This document shows positions 1,143 through 18,691 of a stretch of 19,850 bases of DNA, one piece after another (the first letter of the stretch is position 1; every line of letters starts with the position of its first letter). Both the position numbers and the translations under genes were made by a program. The stretch covers positions 1 through 19,850 of the forward strand of contig NIVC01005228.1 in assembly GCA_002269645.1 (NCBI GenBank), written 5' to 3'. This DNA is from Macrostomum lignano. Its lineage: Eukaryota. A model generated the notes under the pieces. It made no database searches. It had not been told where the DNA came from and worked only from the letters and a program-made list of their open reading frames with translations.

Positions 1143-2060
1143 CTATTTGATTCCGTACATCCTCATCTTAGCCTCCATCTCAGCCATCCTTGCCCTCTGT
1201 TCATCGAGCTCCTGCTGCTGCAGAGCGATGCGGTCGTCCTTCTCCAGGTCTTTTCGATAGAATTCCAGTGCGGTCTGCAGCGCTTCGATCGCCTTCTTGT
1301 CCAGCTGGATGGTTTCGGCTTTGTCTCCGCTGCTCTTCAGCCTCTTGGCGATAACTTCCAGTTGGTTTGAGTCGTCTCTGAAGCCTCTGGCCAGCTCACG
1401 CATCGCCTTCACATCGACCACTGTGTTCCTGGCCACCACACCGGCTCCAACGCCGCAGGCTGTGCCAGCAGCGGCACCAGCTGCAATCCAGGCGAGTCCG
1501 CCGGTGAAGAAGCCGAGAGCCGCGAGCCCGATCCCTCCAATCGCCAGGCCGGCAGTCTTTGCCGCTCCCCTGTTTCTCGTGCTGTTCGCTTCCTTCTCCA
1601 GCTCATCCGCTTTCTGCTTCAGCTTATCAGTGAGTTTCGTGGCGATTTGCTGTGCTTTGAGCAAGTGGCCGATGAATTCATCGAATGCGGCTGAGAAGTC
1701 GCTCGCCATTCTATGAGTAGAGATGAGCATCTCACAGAACTCCCTGACTACTTCTGGAGGGACGCTGCTCTTGATTTTTGTACTCACGAATCTCTCGAAC
1801 ACTTGGATTTCTTTCCCGAAGTTCTGGAGCCAGACTTCCAGCTTGGATCCGGAGCTCCGCACTTTTTCCAGCTGCAGCTTCAGTTCCTTCAGCAGCGGCT
1901 CATTGGGCAGGTCGAGTTGATCCACCTCGCTTGCGTGCTTCTTCGTTTGCTCGATAACTCTGTACAGCTCGGTTCTATCGTCTTGGAGCAACTTCATCGT
2001 TTTGACAGCCTTGCTGATGCCGCTCAGGACGTCGCCGATCTCTCCCAGCTTCTCAGCCAT
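1143..2060 (-). CDS. Apolipoprotein-L-like / alpha-helical pore-forming-like protein, paralogue A (305 aa, intronless)
   Basis: Open ATG-TAG ORF, GC-rich against AT-rich flanks. Long amphipathic/coiled-coil helices flank a Gly/Ala-rich hydrophobic hairpin (AGLAIGGIGLAALGFFTGGLAWIAAGAAAGTACGVGAGVV) whose FTGG core recalls the APOL LAPFTxG motif. Clear paralogue at 3572-4531. The CDS is secure; the family assignment is by pattern only. Confidence 0.8.
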   Translation of the reverse strand: MAEKLGEIGDVLSGISKAVKTMKLLQDDRTELYRVIEQTKKHASEVDQLDLPNEPLLKELKLQLEKVRSSGSKLEVWLQNFGKEIQVFERFVSTKIKSSVPPEVVREFCEMLISTHRMASDFSAAFDEFIGHLLKAQQIATKLTDKLKQKADELEKEANSTRNRGAAKTAGLAIGGIGLAALGFFTGGLAWIAAGAAAGTACGVGAGVVARNTVVDVKAMRELARGFRDDSNQLEVIAKRLKSSGDKAETIQLDKKAIEALQTALEFYRKDLEKDDRIALQQQELDEQRARMAEMEAKMRMYGIK

Positions 2061-2666: not shown

Positions 2667-3138
<472 letters not shown>

Positions 3139-3571: not shown

Positions 3572-4531
3572 CTATTTAATGCCGTGCATCCTCATCTTGG
3601 CCTCCAACTCAGCAATCCTTGCATCCATTGCATCGCGCTGCTCCTGCTGCCGCCGAGCGATGCGGCCGTCCTGGTCCAGAAGTAGAAATCCAGCTCCACT
3701 TGCTTCACCACCGCTTTCATCCGGGCTTTCATCCCTGCTGAGCAGCTCCAACAGTGTCTGCAGCGCCTCGATGTCCTCGTCTAGTCGGATGCGTCCGGCC
3801 TTGTCGAGAATGCTCTCAATATTCCTTGCTATAACAGCTAGTTTCATTGAGCAATTTCGCATGTTCTCAACCTGCCGTTGTTTTGTTTTTGCGTTAGCGA
3901 CAGTGGTTGCAGCAACGGCACCGGCAGCGACACTAGAGGTGGCTCCAGCGGTAGCGGCGGCAGCTGCGGCTGCAGCGGCCACCAGGGCAGCTCCTCCAGT
4001 AAATAAACTGACGGCCGCGAGCCCGGCTCCTCCAACAGCCAGACCGGCTGCTCCTGCCGCCCCTCGGATTCTCGTCTGGTGCTTTTGCCGCTTGAGCTCC
4101 TCCGCCTTCTGTGTGAGCCTCTCACAGAGCTTCTTTGCGAGCCGATGCGAGTCATTCAGTCCGTCGTTGAATCTTCCAAGAGCTTCACGCGAGTCTCTGA
4201 GACTCCGAATTGATTGCTGCACCTTTTCACAAAACTCTCTCTTTGCTTCACGAGTAAACTCGCTAGAGACGGGAAACAGTCGTTGAAAATGGTTGAACAA
4301 TTCTTTTACTTCCGAGTACCGACACCACGACATGAGCTCGTATCCAATATCGCATACGCTCTGCAGTGCCCGTCTCAGTTTCTCTGACTTCGGCTCATCA
4401 GTCAGTCTTATTTCTTCCATTTGTGTGGCCAGGTGATTCGTCTCCTCGATAAGACAGTGCAGCTCATAACTGCATCCATTAGATGTTGACGTCCTGAAAA
4501 TTCGCGATGCAAAATATGCAAGCTCAGCCAT
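3572..4531 (-). CDS. Apolipoprotein-L-like / alpha-helical pore-forming-like protein, paralogue B (319 aa, intronless)
   Basis: Open ATG-TAG ORF. Shares with paralogue A the segments QKA(D/E)EL, RGAAxxAGLA(I/V)GGxGLAAxxxFTGG, IEALQT and the C-terminus AR(M/I)AE(M/L)EAKMRMxGIK. Carries an extra acidic/Gly insert (DESPDESGGEASGAGF). Confidence 0.8.
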   Translation of the reverse strand: MAELAYFASRIFRTSTSNGCSYELHCLIEETNHLATQMEEIRLTDEPKSEKLRRALQSVCDIGYELMSWCRYSEVKELFNHFQRLFPVSSEFTREAKREFCEKVQQSIRSLRDSREALGRFNDGLNDSHRLAKKLCERLTQKAEELKRQKHQTRIRGAAGAAGLAVGGAGLAAVSLFTGGAALVAAAAAAAAATAGATSSVAAGAVAATTVANAKTKQRQVENMRNCSMKLAVIARNIESILDKAGRIRLDEDIEALQTLLELLSRDESPDESGGEASGAGFLLLDQDGRIARRQQEQRDAMDARIAELEAKMRMHGIK

Positions 4532-5915: not shown

Positions 5916-6070
5916 GTGATCAGTGACAATGAAGAAAAAAAACTCTGGGAACCTGTGCTGGGCAACAGTTCTCCAATGCAGCTTCTTCGCAAATGCGTAA
6001 GTGGGTTGCACTTCGCTCTCCGCGGCGTAAAAGAGCACAGCAATCTAGACATTGGGCAATTTAGAAATCA
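5916..6070 (+). pseudogene. Relic of a Crypton-type DUF3504 tyrosine recombinase
   Basis: Translation ISDNEEKKLWEPVLGNSSPMQLLR..GLHFALRGVKEHSNLDIGQF follows the DUF3504 pattern EExxLWxxGxLG...PxxL...GxxFxLRGxxEHxxL, including the first catalytic Arg (6021-6023). There is an in-frame stop at 5910, no ATG, and the C-terminal HxxR/H/Y motifs were not found. Confidence 0.7.
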
Positions 6071-7796
6071 GGAGAGAAATGGTAGGCGTAACAACAACAA
6101 ACAACAAAATACGCAATTAGCGTCACAGGGCGCGCTTCAAGGCCAGGTCGCGAACGAACGCCACACCACCGGCCGAATCCGGGGCGCCGGCGTCAGCCAG
6201 CAGGCAGTCGACGAAACGCAGAGTGCGCGCCTGCCCCGCCGGTAGGGTGCCTGCAGCGTTAGCAGCTGTTGCCAGCTGTTGGATCTGGTAAATCTCTTTA
6301 AATCTCTTTATTAGGACTTGCTAAGCATTACGGGAAATATCACTCAGCAACATCGAAAAGTCGCAATCACATAAGATTCCGTCTGTGGTCGCCACTTTTG
6401 AGAGTGCAGGTAAAGTCTCTCAATCTTTGCGAGTGTCGCAACTCAGCTACGCCGCGGCAGACTTGAGTTGAGGAATGAAGTGGAGCAGCGATGTGAGAGG
6501 GTTGGGCGGATTAAAGCTACCCCGATCACTTTTCTCATGTCTTTTATTTCAGAATAAAAGTCCAAGTCCAAGAGAAATTGCTCACTGGCGCATAGAATTG
6601 TCGACTTTTTCAAAGTTGCTGAGTGTATTTTAACGATATATTATAGAATATTCATCAGCGAGAAAAACTTTTCGCTTACGGGCACAATGCACTGCGGCAA
6701 ATCTGGGCGGCCAGTTCGTCCTGTCTGCGGCCAATTCTCATGGACCCGTTCTCTCTGGACCTCTCTGTCCAATTCAATCTTGTTATTCTTATCTTTTTCT
6801 CCCTAGCTGCCTTCTGATTGGCTCCTCAATCTCGCCTCTTTCCTTAGCCGCGCATTCCACCCCTCCGTTTATTATTAGGACTGTCGCGTTGTTTAGGAGT
6901 TCAACTAAGTAAGCACGATGATTTGGTAAAATAAACGATGTCTCTGTTTCGATATATTATTAGTCATAAACGATGCTAACAAAATCGATACAAAAAATAA
7001 TTATTGGCGGGGCGGTGGCGGGGCGCACGTGGACTAAATGGGGTGGTGTGCACACTAGATGTACGCAATCAATAACTCAATAATAGTCATTTAATTAGTC
7101 ATTTAGCGCAAGTACAGCGGCAGGCTCAAACGCTGCCTCATGGACTCAACCCTCCCCTCCAATTCAATGTCATAAATACCAATTTGGGCCCGGCGCCCCA
7201 CCTTATTTCTCTACACTGACCGCTTTACACAGCCTATCGCTTAATCATTTGCTTAGCTCAATTCGGTTAGTTGCGAAGCTCGGCCATAGACTATGATTTT
7301 AGCGCCCTGTATTGAGAATTTTTATTTTAGCAGCTTTCGCAATCTCCCCAGTTTAGCCTATGATCTGTGGGCTCAGTTGCAGTGCAGTTCATTCTGAGCG
7401 CCTTTCCCCAGCTTGTATTCAGCAGAGGCGAGCGAGCAGCGAGCAAATCTGAGGCTTTGTTTTTTTTTAGCAAAGGACCTGACTGGGTAAGTTCAACTTC
7501 TGACAGATTCTGCTATGCCTAATAGGAGCTATATGGAATATTTGTTCGCAAAGAGATTCCATAGGGACCTATTTTATTGCATAGCATAGCTTTAAAGTAG
7601 AGACTTGACGTACAGTTTAGATGGCAATGCTTTACAGTTTTTGTTCTATGTTATATAAAAGCAATATAGATTAAGAGAACTCTGTCATCGTGACAGCCTA
7701 TCTGTCATGTCATTCTTTATTTCGACTTCTTGCTTTTTCAATTTAAATTTGCTGTAGCAGCAGCAGCAGCAGTCTAATGCTCTCTATTTACTGTTT

Positions 7797-8310: not shown

Positions 8311-8674
8311 ATTCCGCCGTATTACAACAAATAGCATATAAGAAAAAGACTTAAATGAAACACTCACCTTTATTAAATGCATCTTATATGTTGATCCTCA
8401 ATTGACAAATTAGACAAACGGACACCGGGGTTCAATAAATAGCTTAGTATATAGATAACTTATACTCTAAGATACAATTTATAGTAACATATTTTGGCAA
8501 CAGCAACACTCAATTTCAGAGGCAAACTAGCAATCTTCGCCCCCCGTTGGGGGACATCTGTATAGAATCTCTGTTCTCTACAAGTAACAAAAAGATAGCG
8601 AAATAAAGCCTTCACAAAGAAAACAGACAAAATACTCAAATGAAGTGCAATGCAAAAAGAAATCATCGCAAGAC

Positions 8675-8810
8675 AGCAAGCATCCCCCACATAGCAAGCA
8701 TCCCCCAGATTGCAAGCATCCCCCGAATAGCAAGCATCCCCCAGATAGCAAGCATCCCCCAGATAGCAAGCATCCCCCAGATAGCAAGAATAAGCCGAAT
8801 AAGCAAGGGA
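8675..8810. repeat. 18-bp tandem repeat AGCAAGCATCCCCCAGAT, 6 copies plus degenerate copies
   Basis: Units start at 8675, 8693, 8711, 8729, 8747 and 8765, then decay. Confidence 0.97.
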
Positions 8811-10204
8811 CAAATTGAAACGGTTTTCCTAAATTTTTCTATTGTTACATATTAAATATGTTTGTACTCACAAAAGTATTGCTATTATCTCTGCGATTCT
8901 TGGTTGCTATTATCTCTTTGTGATTTTTATTAGAATTATATAGCATAAAAATTACGCATTTCATGCACATTTGTACAAAGCAATGTAACATCCGTAAGAA
9001 TGCAGTATTAGTATTTAAACAAAGATAAATAGACTTGCCACACAGAAAGTAAGGTTTATCTGTGAAGAAATAAAAATGATAAGTTAAGGCATTTTTAAAC
9101 AGTAACCTAGAGATTAGTCATTTTTTTACATACACATTGGTTGATGACAACTCGCACTGAAATTAATTTGAGCCGAAAATTGTTGTTTTTATAATAATGC
9201 CCTACTATGACCATACATACAGAATAAACTGCATGACGCGTACTAAAACGAACAATATTTGTACTGCAGTGGTCCTTAAAACAGATTTTATGAAAAGTTA
9301 CAATGGCAAGAACAAATAGATGTTGCTTCTTGAATCTTGATTTAATACATATACATAAAAATCTTCAAAGTGTCTTTCACTTTACATATCAAATCTCCAT
9401 TTTAAGTCAAGTTAATAATGGATAAGCCTAGTAGCTAAATTCAGTGGTGACTGCAAATCGTACGAAAACTTATATCAGTAATGAAGGACTTAAAAGGGCC
9501 TCGATTATTTCTCACTGTTGACTGTTATCTTTTATTGGTTTTATAATTTCAAAAATGTGCAGCAGCAAAAGAATATTAATTGGTGTATTTTTATGGGAAT
9601 ATTATCCATTCAACAGCTCAATTTGTCTTTATTGAATACATACTCATATCAACTATGCTGCTTTACTAATACATTGTTAAACAGTACCACCAAAATGTTG
9701 AATTCGTCCATTTTCTCTGCCCTTATTTCATTGATTATTCTACTTATAGATTATATTTTCCATAAAAAATACATACACCAAAATTTAAAGTCTTTATGCG
9801 ATAATTAAGCTATCGCAGTCCATTCCTGCGAATACCAATAAAAGTGACTTCCAAAGTTATTACTTATTAGTAGTGTCCGAATCAGAATAAACTATTAACA
9901 CAAAAAATGCATGAGAAACAAAAAGTAAATTTCGGCAGTTTTTTATATATTATTATAGTAAATGTATAGTTTTGGCCAATAAATAAATAGAATTCTTGTG
10001 AACGAAGGCCGAAATGAAGAGTGAATTTCGTTAAATTACATTCACCAACAAGACAACTCCGAATATTTAGCACAATATTTCTTTGCACACATGCCTTGTA
10101 TGATTTTCTTGCAAAAGGCTTACCAACAAGATAGCCCATTGCACAATTTATATACATTTAATTATTTTGGTGATTTATTACATTTAATTATCTGTTTTGA
10201 CATG

Positions 10205-10319
10205 TTTATGTTTGACGCGGTGGCTGTTTTATGTACGACATGGTGGCTCTTTAGTGTTTGACATGGCGGCTCTTTTATGTTTTACATGGTGCCTCTTTAA
10301 TGTATGACATTGTGGCTCC
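10205..10319. repeat. 23-bp tandem repeat x5, consensus TTTATGTTTGACATGGTGGCTCT
   Basis: Five diverged units in register from 10205 with a conserved GACATGGTGGC core. Confidence 0.9.
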
Positions 10320-10605
10320 TTTTGTTTGAAGAACCAAAAAAACCAAAAGACTCATTATTAAAACGGATTTATCATAAGACAAAGAGCTTTACTTTACTTA
10401 AATTGGTAAAGTGCTCCTAAGGTGCTCCTAACTCAGCATTTTAGTCGTAGTTTAACTTACTTAATCACTTAATCAAATTTTTATTTATTTTTTAATCCAT
10501 TTTTTACTTAATCAAATACTTAACCTAGTTAACAGCAAAAATAGTTATAAATAGTCAAAATACAAATAGTCAAATAGTTAACAGCACAGAAATTAAAAAA
10601 ATGAT

Positions 10606-11216
10606 TCATTCTTCAACGACAGTGCTGCGGCTGCGGCTGCGGCTGCGGCTGCGGCTGCGGCTGCGGCTGCGGCGGCGAGGTAGGTCTCTGCACTCTGCCG
10701 CAATGTGGCCGCGCCGCAGGCAGAATCTGCAGAGTCCAACTGTGAAAAGAAAGCGATTAGATTTGTCAATATTAGTTTTGACGTATATTCACTTCACACG
10801 AAATGAGTGGTCAAACGAAAACTGATTTAGTCAAAACTACCCCTCTAAACAAACTCGTAATACAATTAACTTACGTGCGCGCATTTCGTCTCTCACAAAT
10901 CGAGTTCGCGCTGAGCGCGAGTGTAGCTGCAGTTGATGCTGTTGCTGTTGCTGTTGCGGTTGTTGTTGTTGCTGTTGTTGTTGTTGCAGTTGTTGTTGTT
11001 GCTGTTGTTGTTGCTGCTCCTCTTGCTGTTGCTGCTGTTGCTGCATCGGCCAGGGTGCCGGTGGGAGAATAGGGGGTGGGTATGGGTTGGGATAGGGCAT
11101 CCCAGTAGATGGGGGGGATAAAATACACCAGGAAATGGATAGGGATAGGGATAGGGATAGGGATACGGATAGGGATTGGGATAACTTAGGTAGGGATTAC
11201 TTAGGTACGGATTCAT
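10606..11216 (-). CDS. Spliced gene: Pro/Tyr-rich low-complexity, polyQ, CCHC zinc knuckle, RS tail. Exons 11216 (or 11100)-10875 and 10739-10606
   Basis: The donor C|GTAAGT at 10874 and acceptor TTTCTTTTCACAG at 10740 are phase-compatible. The spliced product reads FVRDEMRALGLCRFCLRRGHIAAECRDLPRR(RS)8TVVEE*, a C-x2-C-x4-H-x4-C knuckle. ATG 11100 gives 119 aa with no correction. ATG 11216 needs one extra base in the G7 run at 11111-11117. Confidence 0.8.
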
Positions 11217-11303
11217 AGTACTGGAAAAAAGACTGGCGTGGGCTTTTAAACTTATTTTTTATTTTGTTCGGGCGTATAGTGAAATTGTTAAGAACAGAGT
11301 TGG

Positions 11304-12042
11304 TTATATATACTATAGTGTACAGTGGCCAAAACCAGATAATGGCTGCCTGCTCCACCACCCCAAATTTGCTGTTTTTTCACCCCCAAATCTCTTGTTA
11401 TCTCTAGCAATGATTGGCTCACCCTGTCGGCTTTTGATTCCTGAGTTATTTCTAACCAATCACCTAACTCCCCAGCCCAGCCTAATAAGCCTATATTTTG
11501 TTTTCAGTGGACAATGAGGGTGAGACATCATACTTAATCACCTCATTATTGATTTTATCTGGTGTCTCTCTACCTCTGTCGTGAAAATTTAGCTACAAAA
11601 TGCACTTTTAAGTTTAAGTGTAAGTTTCAGTTTTGTTTTGTAAAAAATAACAAAAGTTATTATTATATAATTTGATATTATATCTGTTAGTATTTGTTCT
11701 TGTAGTCCAAAAAATCAATAACTTTCCGCGGCACGCGTAAACAGCCCAAATAAAGTAATTGCATGAAAAAAGTCTCAGCGATCCAGTTCGACCCAGCGGA
11801 GGGGTTGGCGCTGACTGCAGCCCCCAATCGACCCCAGCCTAAACCAGCGGACCAATCAGAGGCCACCAAAATTATAAAGGTGGCTAAAATTTACAAACAG
11901 GGGTGACTAAAAAATAGAATAGAGTGGACGGTAAGAAAAAGGCTATAACAGAAAGTCGAGATGCTGACCAATCAGACGGCAGCGAGAAAATATTGAGAGT
12001 TGTTTTGGGACGAAGGGGTGGCTGCAGGGCTGCAATATATAA
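11304..12042. promoter_or_regulatory. Bidirectional promoter with mirror-image CCAAT and TATA modules
   Basis: Leftward: CCAAT (ATTGG 11413-11417) then TATATAA on - (11304-11310). Rightward: CCAAT 11852-11856 and 11968-11972, then TATATAA 12036-12042. Each TATA is about 90-105 bp from an ATG. Confidence 0.65.
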
Positions 12043-12145
12043 TAAAAACAAACTGTAAATGCAGTAAACTTTTCGCCTCAACTGTTTCAAGTCAAGCATC
12101 ACTTTTATCTACTTTTAACTTAGATTCTTTAAGTAACGAAGAGAA

Positions 12146-13768
12146 ATGGAATCAAACCCTACGCCAGCCCAGAAGGTCAAATTCGGCATCTCTGCTCTTC
12201 TGCCCGGCTTGATGGATTCACCGGTCGTTGGTCTGATAACGAGACTGACAAAAATCCACGCCTACGAGAACAACAAAGCTGGATCAGGCCAAGTGTTCTC
12301 CTTCACTTTGACTGACGAGACTGCAGACATCAGAGTGAGCGTTTTTGGCAAGGACCTGAAGTCATTGCTGGAAATGTGCCAAACGGTCGAGACAGTGCGC
12401 ATTTCTGGAGGCTGGATCAAAAAGGCTGACCCAAGGTACAACACTACGGAAAACGAGTATGAGATGAGCGTCTCAGTTGACAAAAGCGGCACCATCATGA
12501 CTTCAAACGAGACGGTCAACAGGCGTCCCCGGGACTACAGGAGGATATCGGAAATTTCTGCATGCCAAATGAAAACGTAAATATCTTGCACTTTGTGCCT
12601 TTATTTTCTTTTATACATTTCCTCGTGCTTTGCTTTACTTTAGGGTTACGGTTAGAGTTAGGCTGAGGTTAGGGTTAAAAGCTTGACCGATTTTTTAAGA
12701 TTTCAAGGCTTAATGGGGAGGGGGGCATCGATGAGATGTCAAGGGGGGAAATTGATATGCTAAGGCTTGTGGGGGGAATTGCTAACATGCCAAGGCTTAC
12801 AAGGGACTGCTGAGGTATTGCAAAGAGACGCTACATGTAGTTTATTAAAAAACTTGTAATGCATTTTTTGGCTGCCCAACGGGGGGCGCTGATTGCTAGT
12901 CATTCAGCTAAATTTGCCCTACTCAAAAACTTTCACCGTACGACAGGAAAGTTGACGTTCGTGGCATCATTTCTGCAGTTGAGAAGCCAAAGGAAGTAAA
13001 AACTGGTGCCGGAAAGCTCGTCGATTTAGCAAAAGTTACCATCGTTGATCGGTCCGGGTCCTCTGTGTCCTGCACTTTTTGGGCCAGTTCTTCTGCGCAG
13101 GTGAATAATTGGTCTATCGGCGACATTCTCGCGATTCATGGCTCTCAAGTCCAAGAGTACGCCCAGATGATAAGCCTCGGCTGTTCGCAAGCAGAAGTAC
13201 ATCACTGGCCAGAAAATTCGCAAGAGTTCTCCGACCTAACCGAGTGGTACAACGGCGCCACAGCTAGCCAGCAGCATTTCGAGGCTGTGCGAGCGACACA
13301 GATTCCACCACCTGAGCAGCAAGCATCACATGATGAAGAAATGACATTACACTACCCCGAACGAATGTTTCACCAGTTTAACAACATGCGAAGAATAAGA
13401 CTGCGTTTCGGAAGCAAAGAGGTTAGTTTATTTCGAAAATGTGTGTTCACTTTAGTTTAATCAAAGGCAGTTATTATTGTATACTTCTTATGAGTGTTCA
13501 CTTCAATTTAATCAAAGACAGTTATAATTATATACTTTTCAAACCGAATCCCACTTCACAGGTAACATTTTCACGAGATTCGAACAGCTGGAATCAGCAG
13601 ATGCCCACAGGCTCTACACCTAGGCCTCTGTACACGAGTGACATGTCTCAGCAGAACAGCTGGAATCAGCAGGTACCCACAGGCTCTACACCTAGAACTC
13701 CGTACACTGGTGACTCGAGCACTCGAAATCAAGAATTTTTGACATCACCAGCAGAAGATGAAGACTAA
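12146..13768 (+). CDS. RPA70-like ssDNA-binding protein (OB folds DBD-A and DBD-B, divergent tail). join(12146..12576,12947..13421,13562..13768), 370 aa
   Basis: Exon 1 GSGQVFSFTLTDETADIRVSVF..GGWIKKADPRYNTTENEYEM matches RPA70 DBD-A ([42 protein letters not shown]). Exon 2 KVDVRGII..VTIVDRSGSSVSCTFW..ILAIHGSQVQEY..LTEWY matches DBD-B. Both introns (12577-12946, 13422-13561) are GT-AG and keep the frame, and the spliced ORF is open to TAA at 13766-13768. Not called RPA1 because 70N and DBD-C are absent. Confidence 0.9.
12640..12676 (+). repeat. Degenerate TTAGGG-like repeats in intron 1 of the RPA-like gene
   Basis: ttagggttacggttagagttaggctgaggttagggtta: about six imperfect hexamers. Confidence 0.6.
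13582..13712 (+). repeat. 72-bp-period coding duplication (NSWNQQxPTGSTPRxxYT, two copies)
   Basis: gaacagctggaatcagcag..cccacaggctctacacctag occurs at 13582 and 13654. Confidence 0.95.
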
Positions 13769-13956
13769 TTTTTTCTTTTTGAATTTCTTCAAACTGAATT
13801 CGAACAGATATCAATCAGAACATTTTTTCCTCAACCTCTATTTCTGTGCTGTTGTCTTTTAACTTTCGCAAATTTTGAATTTATATTACATTGAGTATTA
13901 TTAACTGATTGCTAACTGAACCTAGGCTGAGTACGACAGGATTGGATTAGAAGTTA

Positions 13957-15135
13957 CTAATCCTTGAAGGAATAGTAGTGTCGAATCCAATACAGAAGAG
14001 ACCCCATAACACTCTTTTTGTGCAGCCGTCGAAATTGGAACTCATTCAGATAAGATTGAAACAGTTCCTCAGATGTCCGATGCATACGCTTGTACTTCTT
14101 TTTACAGTGACACCACATGGATTCCACTGATTGCGTATGCACATCACGATCAGCAGGAGAGACGAAGTTAAGTGAGTGGTTCACAGTCCGATGATTTGAC
14201 AACCTATTATAAGCTTGCCATTCATCTGACATAATGATTGTGCCAGGCTCCACTCGCTCTTCTATTATGGGTAAAAGAGTCGCTGCAGAACAATCTTTTA
14301 CCGGTATTAGAAAGATATGAGTAGAACCACGTTCAACCATGCCAAACACCCACTTCTGCTCACGCTGACGGCCTTTGTTGTACTTACGCTTGAAGTACAG
14401 GGACTCGTCAATTTCCACTATTTTATTTGGACCGCCTAACTTGAAGGGATGGTCTTCAAGATATTTGGTACAAATTTCACGGCAGAAATTGAACCAGTCC
14501 ACTAGCGTTTGTTGGGACACCTTAGTCTCTGCTGCAATAAAATCAAAGTCACCAATATCAGCAGCCCACCAAAAGATGATATGAAGGCACTGAAACAAAC
14601 TAAGATGAGACCGCTCAAAAAACGATTTCGTGCGAATTGAGGTATTGGTTCGGCAACTCTTGCAATACCATGTTGATTTGTCCGCCACACTTGATCTTTT
14701 GACTAATCCCATTGGACCCGAGCATGACGAACACAACATGGTATTGGCGATTAGTCCGATTCTAACCAAGAATTGCAAAACCTCAGTCTCACTTTCGTGA
14801 AATTGAGTAATGAATGCGGTGTGTGTCGGATTATAATCTAGAACATACCGAGCTTCCTCAATATTTACATTGAACATTTTAGTAGATGCTGCCGGTCGCC
14901 CACGACGCTTACCAGAAGCTTGTTTGACAACATCTTTGGATTTCGTAGAAGCTTTGGAGTCCGCATTATTGGCCGCACAAGCTCCCCCTGGTACAGCCTC
15001 TCGGTCAGCACCACGAGCAGCTTGATTGTCCATAAGTTGGTTCCATTGCTCCTCGAACCCTTGGACGTCTTCCTCAAACAAGTCATCTGAATCAGACGAC
15101 ACGAGAAACGAGAGAATCCACCAAAGAGTCAACAT
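13957..15135 (-). CDS. Merlin-family (IS1595/ISXO2-like) DDE transposase, apparently intact (392 aa ORF)
   Basis: Zn ribbon CSSC..WYCKSC; HTH region; catalytic core LGGPNKIVEIDES (D), KRKYNKGR, WVFGMVER, IIMSDEWQAY (D), VNHSLNFV, HTQSVESMW (E), YLNEFQFR. The true start may be the internal Met MDNQ at 15033. TIRs and TSD were not found. Confidence 0.93.
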   Translation of the reverse strand: MLTLWWILSFLVSSDSDDLFEEDVQGFEEQWNQLMDNQAARGADREAVPGGACAANNADSKASTKSKDVVKQASGKRRGRPAASTKMFNVNIEEARYVLDYNPTHTAFITQFHESETEVLQFLVRIGLIANTMLCSSCSGPMGLVKRSSVADKSTWYCKSCRTNTSIRTKSFFERSHLSLFQCLHIIFWWAADIGDFDFIAAETKVSQQTLVDWFNFCREICTKYLEDHPFKLGGPNKIVEIDESLYFKRKYNKGRQREQKWVFGMVERGSTHIFLIPVKDCSAATLLPIIEERVEPGTIIMSDEWQAYNRLSNHRTVNHSLNFVSPADRDVHTQSVESMWCHCKKKYKRMHRTSEELFQSYLNEFQFRRLHKKSVMGSLLYWIRHYYSFKD

Positions 15136-15867: not shown

Positions 15868-16822
15868 AGAATAGGAAAGCCGGTCAGGTTTAGTCAATTT
15901 TATCAAGTCTCTCACGTAGTATTCGATGACGAGGGAGGAAGGCCAGACACGAAGCAGGAATGCAGGAGGATGGGAGAGAGCAGGATAAGAGCGGCTTGCG
16001 ACGGAGCGGACAAATTGATCTTCACGGATGTTTCGGTTGATAAGGGAGGCAAAGGAGGGGGAAGTACGATAACGGCGCGGTGGTCGAAAGGCAAATGGTG
16101 GCCGGCGGACAGCTCGCGTCCTCGATGCAGGCGGAGCTTTACGCGTTGAAGGCGGCAATCAGGTGGCTGGCGATTAACAACAACTGGCACAAAGCTGTGA
16201 TTGCGACAGACAGCAAAAGCTATTAAAAAGACCAGCAAGAACCCGATCGTCTGCAGCATTAGAAAAGCGCTGAGCGAGATGGAAGGGCGAGAGATGGTGA
16301 TGCTGTGGATACCGAGCCACTGCGGGATCGTAGGGAACGAAGTGGCGGACGAATGGGCTATTCGGGCGGTCAGGGAAGTGAGCAATGAAGGAATTGGAGT
16401 CATGGCGAGCACGATGGCGAGGATGGCGAGGAGGCGGTGTAGAAGGAAGGTGTGGAGGCACGAGAGGATGAGGGCGACGTACGGCGGCTCGGAGGGACCA
16501 AGGAAAGATCCGGAGTTCACGAGCAGGAAGGAGGAGGTTAGTTTTACAAGATGGCGTACGGGACACTCGCTGGAGCTGGCAGCGTTTAGAAAGAGAATCG
16601 GGCTGCAGCAGGATGGAAATTGCAGGCAGTGTGGCATGGAGGAGGAGACCATCGAGCACATGGTGGCCTGCCCGGTTCTGGACAGCTGCTGGAGGGGATG
16701 GAGGAGCGGAGTTCTGAGTGAGGTTTGCATGAAGGCGGAGGAAGCGCTGAAGATGTGGGAGTGGTGGAAGAGGAAACCACCGGAAAGCAGCTAGACATCT
16801 ACAACAACAACAACAACAACAA

Positions 16823-16827
<5 letters not shown>
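15868..16827 (+). mobile_element. 5'-truncated, frameshifted non-LTR retrotransposon (I-group-like): RNase H, C-terminal CCHC zinc finger, (ACA/CAA)n tail
   Basis: RNase H motifs across three frames: LIFTDVS, SSMQAELYALKAAI, KAVIATDSKS, MLWIPSHCGIVGNEVADEWA. Then RWRTGHS..CRQCGMEEETIEHMVACP, stop at 16792-16794 and an ACA-repeat tail at 16801-16827. No RT domain is present. Confidence 0.9.
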
Positions 16828-16856
<29 letters not shown>

Positions 16857-16999
16857 CGCTACAACCGGCCGAGCGCGAGCAGCAGCAGCAGGCGCTACGA
16901 CCAGCCGAGCTGGAGCAGCAGCAGGAGCAGCCGCAGGAGACGTAGGAGACGCAGGATCAGTCTACATCAGACTACATCAATTGGGTGAGAGGGTTCCTA
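16825..16999 (+). pseudogene. Inverted partial copy of the polyQ exon at 18692-18900
   Basis: Reads QQQALQPAEREQQQQALRPAELEQQQEQPQET*ETQDQSTSDYINWVRGFL, nearly identical to the - strand ORF. It has a nonsense change CAG to TAG at 16943-16945. Confidence 0.92.
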
Positions 17000-17599: not shown

Positions 17600-18157
17600 C
17601 AACTCGAAAGTCCTTGCAATATGTTTTGCAATCGTTCAGCGAGCTCGTCCGGGCATTGTTTCCTCCATTTCGATAGGTTTCCTTAACCTAGTAAGTTTCA
17701 TTTTTTCTAAATTTCCAGTATTAAGAAGCCAATCAGAAAAGTGCCATAGGATAAATTTTAAATTCGAAATCGAAACTGCTCTGCGACTTTGGTGCTCTCC
17801 TCTGATTGAGTCACGGCAATGTGCGTATTCGTGCCATAGACGCTAAGGAAGTTGCCACCAAATGCCACTGAGTCCTCGGGGGTGAAGACTGCATGGATCC
17901 ACCCTGCCGGCACCAGCAATGTGTTTCTTGGCTGCAGCACAACACGGTAGACTGGGCCTGTTGCTGTTTCGTCCAGGAAAGCATCCGAGTCGGCAGTTTG
18001 CCAGTGCTCATATGCGCGGATGTTTCGCTCAGTAGGCAGCATTAGATAAGAAATTTTACAGCCGCTGGCTAGCGTGAACAAAAGTCGCTTCCACCTAGAT
18101 CTATGTGAAAATTGGTAAATGATTTCTTCGCACTGATCAGCACTGATTCGGGAAGAG
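17600..18157 (-). pseudogene. JmjC histone-demethylase domain (KDM2/KDM7-PHF8-like), frameshifted
   Basis: Across frames: LISAKKSFTNFHIDLGGS (HxD at 18107-18099), FTLASGCKI, TERNIRAYEHW, LVPAGWIHAVFTPEDSVAFGGNFL (third ligand His 17893-17895), FRF(P)NLKFILW. These match the KDM2/PHF8 motifs YTDFH(V/I)DFGG, IPSGWIHAV.TP.D..VFGGNFL and FRFPNFETICW. Single-base losses are needed at about 18079 and 17766. The left boundary is approximate. Confidence 0.9.
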
Positions 18158-18185
18158 CTGATTATAAGCGGCATAAATTATTAAT

Positions 18186-18691
18186 GCTAAATTTGGCATT
18201 CGGAAATACCGACGTCTCGCTAATCACAGCGACGGTAATGTTTGGATCCTCGTCCACCAGAGCCCTGACAGCAGCGATGTTGGCTTCGGTCACAGCTGTG
18301 CTGGGTCGTCCAGACCGGGGGTCGTCGTTCAAGGAGGCCCGTCCGGCGTTGATGGACTCTATCCACCTGGCGACCGTGCGATAGGAAGGGGCTTGGTCCC
18401 CGACTACCTGGACCAGGTCTGCATGGATTTTGACCGCGCTTTCTCCGAGTCGTGAGCGCAAGAAAACGTAGAATTGCCACTGGTCTGGTTGCACTGGCTC
18501 CATTTTTGGCAGATTGTAAAACACCACCTTGCGTTGGCCACGCACAAGTATAACACATTCGAGGGAAAAAAGTCATACTCTATGGTTAAAACCAATATAT
18601 GTCGGCGATTTCGTAAAAAAATTTCATCGCTTTGTGATATGTACTTTTAGAGATATTAGGTCAGTTGCCAAAACTTTTTGAATGCCCCTCG
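18186..18691 (-). mobile_element. 5' half of a mariner (Tc1/mariner) element: TIR plus N-terminal double HTH
   Basis: The - strand reads TA|CGAGGGGCATTCAAAAAGTTTTGGCAAC, a mariner-type TIR with TA at 18692-18693. The ORF from ATG 18503 includes ESAVKIHADLVQVVGDQAPSYRTVARW..LNDDPRSGRPSTAVTEANIAAVRALVDEDPNIT. No DD34D domain or second TIR is in the window. Confidence 0.92.

What the first reader, a model, noticed from the sequence alone, without database searches (positions are those of the whole stretch)
12146..13768. Hidden three-exon minimal RPA70: DBD-A+B only, with all four DNA-stacking aromatics retained
Seen: splicing joins three ORF-track fragments into a 370-aa protein. Established: human RPA70 stacks ssDNA with F238, F269, W361 and F386. 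By manual alignment these are F (QVFSF), Y (DPRYN), W (CTFWA) and Y (VQEYA) here. The N-terminal 70N protein-interaction domain and DBD-C (zinc ribbon, trimerisation) are missing and are replaced by a short unique segment and a duplicated STPR-containing 24-aa repeat. Inference: a stand-alone ssDNA binder that cannot join the RPA trimer, either a transposition accessory factor or an RPA competitor.
Basis: partly seen in the sequence, partly recalled or inferred. Interest (0 to 1): 0.7.

Follow-up and report, generated by a model that had tools for sequence, protein, structure and literature searches.

The report
Helitron transposon's own RPA-like ssDNA binder
The three-exon gene is real and encodes a compact two-domain relative of the RPA70 single-stranded-DNA binder, but it is the passenger gene of a rolling-circle (Helitron) transposon of the flatworm Macrostomum lignano, which is a known kind of Helitron accessory gene and is already annotated.

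Summary
Exons 12146-12576, 12947-13421 and 13562-13768 have GT..AG introns and give a 370-aa protein. That protein is identical to UniProt A0A1I8G617 of Macrostomum lignano. Pfam, PDB sequence search and an AlphaFold model all show RPA70 DBD-A plus DBD-B and nothing else from RPA70. All four DNA-stacking aromatics are kept. One was mis-mapped: human F238 corresponds to F67 in VSVFG, not to QVFSF.

The gene lies inside a canonical Helitron on the minus strand. The Helitron 3' end (C/G hairpin, CTAG, then host T) is at 8527-8553. Four other genomic copies show a unit of about 14.4 kb. It carries a Rep/PIF1-helicase gene with STPR and a weak OTU match, and ends in 5'-TC. The window holds only the 3' 5.36 kb and breaks at 13882.

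A second Helitron family and an RPA-only 3.5-kb Helitron carry diverged paralogues of this gene. dN/dS is about 0.18.

RPA-like genes downstream of Rep/Hel, including 358-aa versions with only DBD-A and DBD-B, are already published. This is a new member of a known kind. The likely role, inferred and not shown, is coating the single-stranded transposition intermediate.

The parts
8526..8526 (.). Host nucleotide flanking the Helitron 3' end. It is T on the element's strand and A on the + strand.
   Evidence: The same boundary sits next to three unrelated flanks in the window, L001 and L006. A T follows CTAG in every copy.
8527..8553 (-). Helitron 3' terminus: CCCCCAACGGGGGG hairpin, 9-nt spacer, then CTAG-3'.
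   Evidence: Pattern scan. The fold gives a 5-bp G:C stem, which on its own is no better than shuffled sequence (z -1.1). The C-run/G-run plus CTAG is conserved in families A, B and D, with different loops and spacers.
8527..13882 (-). The 3'-terminal 5,356 bp of a Helitron of about 14.4 kb (family A). This copy has no Rep/Hel gene.
   Evidence: 99.3% identical to L006 and 96-98% to L001, L004 and L005 over exactly this span. Full copy in L001 runs 6418-20797. tblastn with Rep/Hel pieces finds nothing in the window.
12146..12576 (+). Exon 1 (aa 1-144, phase-2 end): N-terminal peptide and OB fold DBD-A, with F67 at 12344-12346 and Y98 at 12437-12439.
12577..12946 (+). Intron 1 (370 nt, GT..AG). 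It contains a degenerate TTAGGG-like run.
   Evidence: The position is conserved in L002 and L003.
12947..13421 (+). Exon 2 (aa 144-302): OB fold DBD-B (W189 at 13080-13082, Y215 at 13158-13160), the post-DBD-B helix (aa 236-250) and the start of the conserved C-terminal mini-domain.
13422..13561 (+). Intron 2 (140 nt, GT..AG). It contains a 51-bp tandem duplication.
   Evidence: Present at the same place in L003 and L008 and absent in L002.
13562..13768 (+). Exon 3 (aa 303-370 plus stop): end of the mini-domain (..VTFSRD), two 24-aa repeats (13583-13654 and 13655-13726), and the acidic tail QEFLTSPAEDED.
   Evidence: (pLDDT below 50 from aa 319).
13882..13883 (.). Breakpoint where this copy stops matching all other copies. 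The other copies continue into a ~100-bp tandem duplication, a repeat array and the Rep/Hel gene.
13957..15135 (-). Neighbouring intact 392-aa ORF with an ISXO2/IS1595-type DDE transposase domain. It lies outside the Helitron fragment and is not part of the RPA-like gene's element.
   Evidence: Pfam PF12762 at 4.1e-25. No terminal inverted repeat was found. The exact protein is not on record.

Best explanation
The gene is the accessory RPA70-like gene of a canonical Helitron (HLE1-type rolling-circle transposon) of Macrostomum lignano.

Shown: it encodes two tandem OB folds homologous to RPA70 DBD-A and DBD-B with the four base-stacking aromatics. These are followed by the conserved post-DBD-B helix, a small conserved helix-plus-beta-strand module, and a disordered tail with a duplicated 24-aa unit and an acidic end. 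The gene lies between the Helitron's Rep/Hel gene and the element's 3' terminus. In this family it is on the strand opposite to Rep/Hel. The window's copy is a fragment that kept the 3' end and an intact RPA-like gene but has no Rep/Hel.

Inferred mechanism: Rep nicks the 5' end of the element and the PIF1-type helicase peels off one strand. The RPA-like protein then coats that single strand, or the circular single-stranded intermediate, through the high-affinity DBD-A/B core. This would protect the strand and keep it unfolded, as SSBs do for rolling-circle replicons. Because it lacks 70N and DBD-C, it should act as a monomer outside the RPA70/32/14 trimer. The conserved C-terminal module and tail are the likely contact with Rep/Hel or a host partner.
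For: RPA70 A/B homology. Aromatics retained and conserved in five subfamilies.

Helitron context:
- The 3' hairpin plus CTAG plus T lies at 8527-8553, with three different flanks in different copies.
- Four other copies share a unit of 14 kb or more. It carries STPRs (1.2e-09), OTU (weak, 0.0021), Helitron_like_N (3.6e-46) and PIF1 (1.2e-19) on the opposite strand.
- The 5' end TCCTATATACTAAAAATGAAAT is at L001 20797.
- A second, complete 11.3-kb Helitron (L002 436-11713, A|TC...CTAG|T) carries the 45%-identical paralogue just downstream of Rep/Hel and 0.6 kb from the 3' end.
- A third family is a 3.5-kb Helitron carrying only the RPA-like gene.

Selection: dN/dS is 0.18 overall, 0.20 for DBD-A, 0.10 for DBD-B and 0.16 for aa 226-310.

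Literature: RPA lies downstream of RepHel in HLE1, with OTU upstream and STPRs specific to HLE1 (PMC11417382). A 358-aa Helentron RPA ORF with only DBD-A and DBD-B has been described (PMC4067079). RPA-only 'semi-autonomous' Helitrons are known in rice (PMC4683698).
Against: - No biochemical function has been shown for any Helitron RPA-like protein. HELIANO's authors note that such genes are often fragmented and may not be essential.
- The window copy has no Rep/Hel and no 5' end, so this particular copy cannot be autonomous.
- Some sister copies carry a nonsense codon (L004 W336*) or 1-nt deletions (L005, L006), although the deletions could be PacBio errors.
- Between two Helitron families the RPA-like gene has diverged much more than Rep/Hel: dN 0.53 against about 0.11. 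This means weaker constraint or module exchange.
- dS is near saturation, so the dN/dS values are rough.
Confidence: 0.82

Rival explanations
1. RPA decoy or stealth binder. The protein's main role is to out-compete host RPA on transposon ssDNA. Because it lacks 70N and the RPA32-binding DBD-C, the intermediate would not recruit the host's RPA-dependent checkpoint and repair factors. This refines the accessory-factor model and does not exclude it.
For: 70N and DBD-C are absent from the gene and from whole elements. The high-affinity A/B core and its aromatics are retained. That 70N and RPA32 are the protein-recruitment surfaces of RPA is established knowledge about RPA, not a result obtained here.
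Against: Nothing in the sequence distinguishes competition from simple coating. The conserved C-terminal module points to a positive partner interaction rather than mere absence of interactions.
Confidence: 0.2
2. Functionless captured fragment. The Helitron picked up the A/B exons of the host RPA1 gene, as Helitrons often pick up gene fragments, and carries them passively.
For: Helitrons are well known for gene capture. Only part of RPA70 is present. Some copies are broken.
Against: - dN/dS is 0.1-0.25 in every region, including the non-RPA C-terminal part.
- Complete ORFs with their own start, introns and stop are conserved across at least four subfamilies at 35-65% identity.
- The four DNA-stacking aromatics are invariant or conservatively replaced.
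- Identity to any canonical RPA70 is only 20-26%, so this is not a recent capture.
Confidence: 0.06
3. Host gene. It is a domesticated or lineage-specific RPA1 paralogue (in the manner of RADX, MEIOB or Teb1) that merely lies near transposons in a repeat-rich genome.
For: - The Pfam OB_MEIOB_N match is borderline: 27.2 bits against a cutoff of 27.
- The gene is transcribed and annotated in a core gene set that was filtered against repeat annotations.
- The window copy is intact although its Helitron is truncated.
Against: - In every locus examined the gene lies between Helitron ends, or at a fixed offset from a Helitron end and Rep/Hel.
- It is multi-copy: at least 5 loci of family A and at least 8 gene models of family B.
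- Its flanks differ right at the element terminus.
- There is no third OB fold as in MEIOB or RADX.
Confidence: 0.05

Closest known systems
RPA-like genes of canonical Helitrons (HLE1), for example plant Helitron RPA (PHRPA) and the RPA domain found downstream of RepHel in the HELIANO survey (PMC11417382, PMC4683698)
   Same: The gene is an RPA70 homologue carried inside a TC...CTAG Helitron that inserts at A|T. It lies downstream of Rep/Hel. The element also has STPRs and OTU upstream of Rep, as HELIANO reports for HLE1. An RPA-only derivative exists (L007/L008), like the rice Mothra mother element.
   Different: The host is an animal (a flatworm); Thomas et al. 2014 describe animal Helitrons as typically encoding a single ORF. 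In the window's family the gene is inverted relative to Rep/Hel. No sequence relationship closer than to generic RPA70 was found. No phylogeny against plant PHRPAs was made.
Helentron (HLE2) RPA ORF, for example the 358-aa mite Helentron protein with only RPA1_DBD_A and RPA1_DBD_B (PMC4067079)
   Same: Same size class (358 against 370 aa) and the same two-domain A+B architecture, without 70N or DBD-C. It is a separate ORF next to Rep/Hel.
   Different: The carrier here has Helitron features, not Helentron features. It has 5' TC, A|T insertion and STPRs. No AP-endonuclease and no DUF6570 was detected. HELIANO places RPA upstream of RepHel in HLE2 and downstream in HLE1; here it is downstream.
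Human RPA70 DBD-A/DBD-B (PDB 1jmc, 1fgu)
   Same: Tandem OB folds with the best sequence and structure match. Equivalents of F238, F269, W361 and F386 are all aromatic. The conserved helix after DBD-B is present.
   Different: Identity is about 21%. There is no 70N, no DBD-C or zinc ribbon, and no evidence of RPA32/14 partners. There is an extra conserved C-terminal module and a disordered repeat tail with no detectable homologue.
SSBs of rolling-circle replicons and phages (bacterial SSB, T7 gp2.5), as a functional analogy only
   Same: An element-encoded ssDNA binder accompanies a Rep nickase and a helicase. A disordered C-terminal tail ends in acidic residues in three subfamilies: EDED, EDD and MDE.
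   Different: There is no sequence homology. The OB arrangement is eukaryotic RPA-type. The acidic tip is not universal: family D ends in NEFL. That SSB tails work this way is recalled knowledge and was not tested here.

Membership tests
Canonical RPA70 / RPA1 | N-terminal 70N (RPA70N, PF04057) protein-interaction domain | tested here: not met
   No Pfam hit. tblastn with six full-length RPA70s gives no match to their N-termini anywhere in the window or in full elements. The start codon and N-terminus are conserved in paralogues.
Canonical RPA70 / RPA1 | Tandem DBD-A and DBD-B OB folds with ssDNA-stacking aromatics | tested here: met
Canonical RPA70 / RPA1 | DBD-C with zinc ribbon (PF08646) that forms the trimerisation core with RPA32 and RPA14 | tested here: not met
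   No Pfam hit. No tblastn match. hhalign of aa 226-318 against an RPA70 profile matches only the post-DBD-B helix; the match to the DBD-C region has probability 0.2%.
Helitron (HLE1) element | 3' end CTRR preceded by a short GC hairpin about 10-12 nt upstream, followed by host T | tested here: met
   Window 8527-8553 on the minus strand, with host T at 8526. The hairpin energy alone is not significant, but the motif is conserved in three families.
Helitron (HLE1) element | 5' end TC preceded by host A, with no target-site duplication and no terminal inverted repeats | tested here: inconclusive
   Met in full copies: L002 position 436 (a|TCCTATATAC...) and L001 20797. Absent from the window because this copy breaks at 13882.
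Helitron (HLE1) element | Rep (HUH, Helitron_like_N) fused to a PIF1-type helicase | tested here: inconclusive
   Met in sister copies L001, L004, L005 and L006 and in L002: Helitron_like_N 3.6e-46 and PIF1 1.2e-19. Not present in the window.
Helitron-encoded RPA-like accessory gene | The gene lies between the element termini at a conserved position relative to Rep/Hel in multiple copies and families | tested here: met
   Family A: 5 loci. Family B: L002, 0.6 kb from the 3' end. Family D: inside a 3.5-kb Helitron.
Helitron-encoded RPA-like accessory gene | Binds ssDNA and contributes to transposition | not testable with these tools
Helentron / HLE2 | AP-endonuclease domain, DUF6570, T|T insertion, subterminal inverted repeats | tested here: not met
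   No such Pfam hits in the Rep/Hel ORFs. Termini are TC...CTAG with A and T flanks.
MEIOB | Three OB folds including a C-terminal OB that binds SPATA22, and a clear PF24903 match | tested here: not met
   PF24903 scores 27.2 bits, at the cutoff of 27, and is weaker than the RPA matches. The model has only two OB folds.

The most novel reading that the evidence does not exclude
Macrostomum Helitrons maintain a private, monomeric RPA made of the DBD-A/B core plus a new C-terminal adaptor module. It coats the transposon's ssDNA intermediate in place of host RPA. It would both assist the Rep/PIF1 helicase and hide the intermediate from RPA-dependent checkpoint signalling. Short RPA-only Helitrons (L007/L008) would spread by supplying or exploiting this factor in trans.
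Probability: 0.25. Interest if true: 0.55.

Novelty: new member of a known kind. Interest (0 to 1): 0.3.

Why it matters
Helitron-borne RPA-like genes have been noted since Helitrons were first described, but none has a demonstrated function.

M. lignano could make that question testable. It is a transgenic-ready laboratory flatworm. It holds complete Helitrons with near-identical copies: the window copy is 99.3% identical to L006. It also has at least four diverged subfamilies of RPA-like genes under purifying selection, and an RPA-only derivative element.

For genome annotation, the practical point is that the entries called 'Replication factor A protein 1' or 'hypothetical protein' in M. 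lignano are transposon genes, not the host RPA1. For the scan itself, the finding is real but ordinary.

Tried and rejected
1. Merlin/IS1595 as the carrier. The adjacent transposase ORF (13957-15135) suggested a cut-and-paste element carrying the RPA gene. I rejected this for three reasons. The shared repeat unit ends at 13882, before that ORF. No sister copy has the ORF. No terminal inverted repeats were found. The exact-protein look-up found nothing.

2. Vestigial DBD-C. The helix plus three strands at aa 282-315 looked like a possible remnant of DBD-C. hhalign against an RPA70 profile gave probability 0.2%, so this is not supported.

3. Tandem Helitron at the window's left flank. The L001 flank is the 5' end of another Helitron. 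The window and L006 flanks show no convincing similarity to it.

4. Acidic C-terminal tip as a universal feature. It is present in three subfamilies but not in family D.

5. P0019. This top-scoring 4022-aa hit is a 26-fold tandem repeat of an RPA fragment from another source. Its score is additive and it is not a close relative.

6. Word-indexed homologue searches reached only six proteins. The exhaustive search was needed to find the other subfamilies.

7. The HELIANO supplements were not available, so I could not check whether Macrostomum was in their survey.

Full report
**Organism and gene model.**
The window is from the flatworm Macrostomum lignano. The 370-aa product is identical to UniRef100_A0A1I8G617 ('Replication factor A protein 1'). 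It differs at two residues from GenBank PAA48194.1. The GenBank annotation of assembly NIVC01 was derived from a genome-guided RNA-seq transcriptome built with StringTie and TACO (PMC5730564). The junctions therefore have indirect transcript support at a 99%-identical sister copy.

A 64%-identical genomic relative from a Logan assembly (L003) has both introns at the same places. The 45%-identical paralogue in L002 keeps intron 1 and lacks intron 2. So the gene is real, but it is not hidden.

**What the protein is.**
- Pfam finds two OB domains: REPA_OB_2 at 3.9e-12 and tRNA_anti-codon at 2e-10.
- The best solved-structure relatives are human RPA70 DBD-A/B, 1jmc and 1fgu, at about 1e-14 over aa 15-226.
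- An AlphaFold model built on a 60-sequence alignment has mean pLDDT 82.5, and above 90 across aa 11-265.
- Its top Foldseek matches are 1fgu_A and 1jmc_A at E about 2.6e-17. For the DNA-bound form 1jmc_A, the target-normalised TM-score is 0.77.

I mapped the aromatics through the HMMER alignment to the full-length human chain. F238 corresponds to F67 (VSVFG), F269 to Y98, W361 to W189 and F386 to Y215. The assignment was wrong, but the conclusion that all four aromatics are retained is right. All four positions stay aromatic in five subfamilies.

No 70N or DBD-C is encoded anywhere in the window or in complete sister elements; tblastn with six full-length RPA70s found none at E<=1.

After DBD-B comes a helix (aa 236-250, with W244) that aligns with the conserved helix after DBD-B in RPA70. 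Next is a small helix-plus-three-strand module (aa 282-315, pLDDT 65-79) with no detectable homologue. Last is a disordered tail holding two 24-aa units, 17/24 identical, and an acidic end.

**Genomic context.**
Look-ups of the near-identical proteins returned four other M. lignano loci: L001, L004, L005 and L006. In each, a gene with Helitron_like_N lies 4.5-6 kb downstream on the opposite strand. DNA comparison shows that they share a unit of 14 kb or more. The window matches that unit only from 8526/8527 to 13882, at 99.3% identity to L006.

The left boundary is sharp and abuts three unrelated flanks. Read on the minus strand, it is a textbook Helitron 3' end...GTCCCCCAACGGGGGGCGAAGATTGCTAG followed by T.

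In L001 the other end of the unit is TCCTATATACTAAAAATGAAAT at position 20797. This gives a 14,380-bp element. Its minus-strand ORFs carry STPRs, a weak OTU match, Helitron_like_N (3.6e-46) and PIF1.

The window contains none of the Rep/Hel gene. At 13882/13883 it departs from all sister copies into unrelated sequence. That sequence holds an intact IS1595/Merlin-type transposase ORF and other transposon debris. Whether this is an insertion or a truncation cannot be decided inside the window.

**Other Helitron families.**
- Family B. The paralogue P0002 lies in a complete 11.3-kb Helitron (L002 436-11713). The element is flanked by A and T and has the same 22-nt 5' end and a related hairpin-CTAG 3' end. 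Its order is STPR, OTU, Rep, PIF1 and then the RPA-like gene, all on one strand. The gene's stop codon is 0.6 kb from the 3' terminus.
- Family D. A further subfamily (P0023/P0166) sits in a 3.5-kb element with Helitron ends and no Rep/Hel within 10 kb. This resembles the RPA-only 'mother element' of rice Mothra (PMC4683698).

The exhaustive profile search found 1864 relatives, but only about ten scored below 1e-30. The named ones among these are all M. lignano proteins, and the rest are unnamed contigs from Logan assemblies. Ordinary RPA70s of many eukaryotes follow at about 1e-25 and 20-26% identity.

**Selection.**
For the window copy against L003, dN/dS is 0.18. By region it is 0.20 for DBD-A, 0.10 for DBD-B and 0.16 for aa 226-310. 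dS is near saturation, so these values are rough, but pN is far below pS.

Near-identical copies differ by 0.2-0.6% in exons. The window copy is intact. L004 has W336*, and L005 and L006 have single-base deletions that may be sequencing errors.

Between families A and B the RPA-like gene has diverged much more than Rep/Hel. It is at 45% amino-acid identity with dN 0.53, against 82-85% identity and dN about 0.11 for Rep/Hel. I cannot tell whether this reflects weaker constraint or exchange of modules between Helitron lineages.

**Comparison with what is known.**
HELIANO (PMC11417382) reports RPA enriched downstream of RepHel in HLE1, OTU upstream of RepHel, and STPRs almost exclusive to HLE1. 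This is the layout found here. Thomas et al. (PMC4067079) described a 358-aa Helentron ORF with only RPA1 DBD-A and DBD-B. They also restate the long-standing proposal that such proteins bind ssDNA during transposition.

The present gene is therefore a new member of a known kind. Its modestly unusual points are:
- the animal (flatworm) host with canonical Helitron ends;
- the inverted orientation in the window's family;
- the conserved non-RPA C-terminal module.

**Mechanism.**
Shown: homology, fold, retained DNA-stacking residues, position inside Helitrons, and purifying selection.

Inferred: the protein coats the strand displaced by Rep/PIF1 as a monomeric A/B-type SSB outside the RPA trimer, with its C-terminal part contacting Rep/Hel or a host factor. 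A decoy role against host RPA is compatible with this and is untested.

Noticed in passing
L001 6417/6418 and 20797/20798 (also L005 234/235 and 14600/14601): Head-to-tail Helitron junctions read CTAG|TCCTATATACTAAAAATG with no host base between them. Related Helitrons therefore lie in tandem. The joint is the same one that a circular transposition intermediate would give.
   Followed up: partly
L007 8243-11755; L008 8245-11768 (with a second 5' end at L008 4815): A 3.5-kb element with Helitron ends (a|TCTTATATACT ... hairpin-CTAG|t) carries only an RPA-like gene (P0023/P0166) and has no Rep/Hel within 10 kb. It is a 'semi-autonomous' Helitron like the rice Mothra mother element. L007 and L008 are 99% identical beyond the element, so its boundaries lack confirmation from independent flanks.
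   Followed up: partly
L001 versus L002 (Rep, PIF1 and RPA-like genes): The RPA-like gene has diverged 4-5 times more at non-synonymous sites than Rep/Hel between the same two Helitron families. Its synonymous sites also look more saturated. This means faster evolution or module swapping, and it is unexplained.
   Followed up: partly
window 13957-15135 (-): An intact 392-aa ORF has an ISXO2/IS1595 (Merlin-type) DDE transposase domain at 4.1e-25. It begins 75 bp after the Helitron breakpoint. No terminal inverted repeats were found and the exact protein is not on record.
   Followed up: partly
window 1143-2060 (-) and 3572-4531 (-): Two paralogous ORFs of 305 and 319 aa have a coiled-coil-like N-terminal half, a Gly/Ala-rich hydrophobic stretch and the same C-terminus (..EAKMRM[YH]GIK). 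Pfam hits are weak only. A (CTA)n microsatellite of about 157 units lies between them at 2667-3138.
   Followed up: no
window 5916-6245, 16201-16794, 17758-18545, 16802-16999 / 18656-19402: Transposon and gene debris is present. It comprises a DUF3504 fragment, an RNase H plus zf-RVT fragment, JmjC and mariner-type HTH fragments, and a Gln-rich repeat ORF whose 42-bp repeats recur as an inverted copy 1.7-2 kb away.
   Followed up: no
window 12640-12680 (intron 1) and 13439-13537 (intron 2): Intron 1 contains a degenerate TTAGGG-like run (ttagggttacggttagagttaggctgaggttagggtt). Intron 2 contains a 51-bp tandem duplication.
   Followed up: no
L001 19112-19531 (-) and equivalents in L002, L004, L006: The Helitron Rep/Hel protein starts with a Pfam STPRs DNA-binding domain (1.2e-09).
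   Followed up: yes
P0019 (protein from the representative library): A 4022-aa predicted protein consists of 26 tandem copies of an RPA70 DBD-A/B fragment, from an unidentified source. It is probably a tandem genomic array read through by gene prediction.
   Followed up: no
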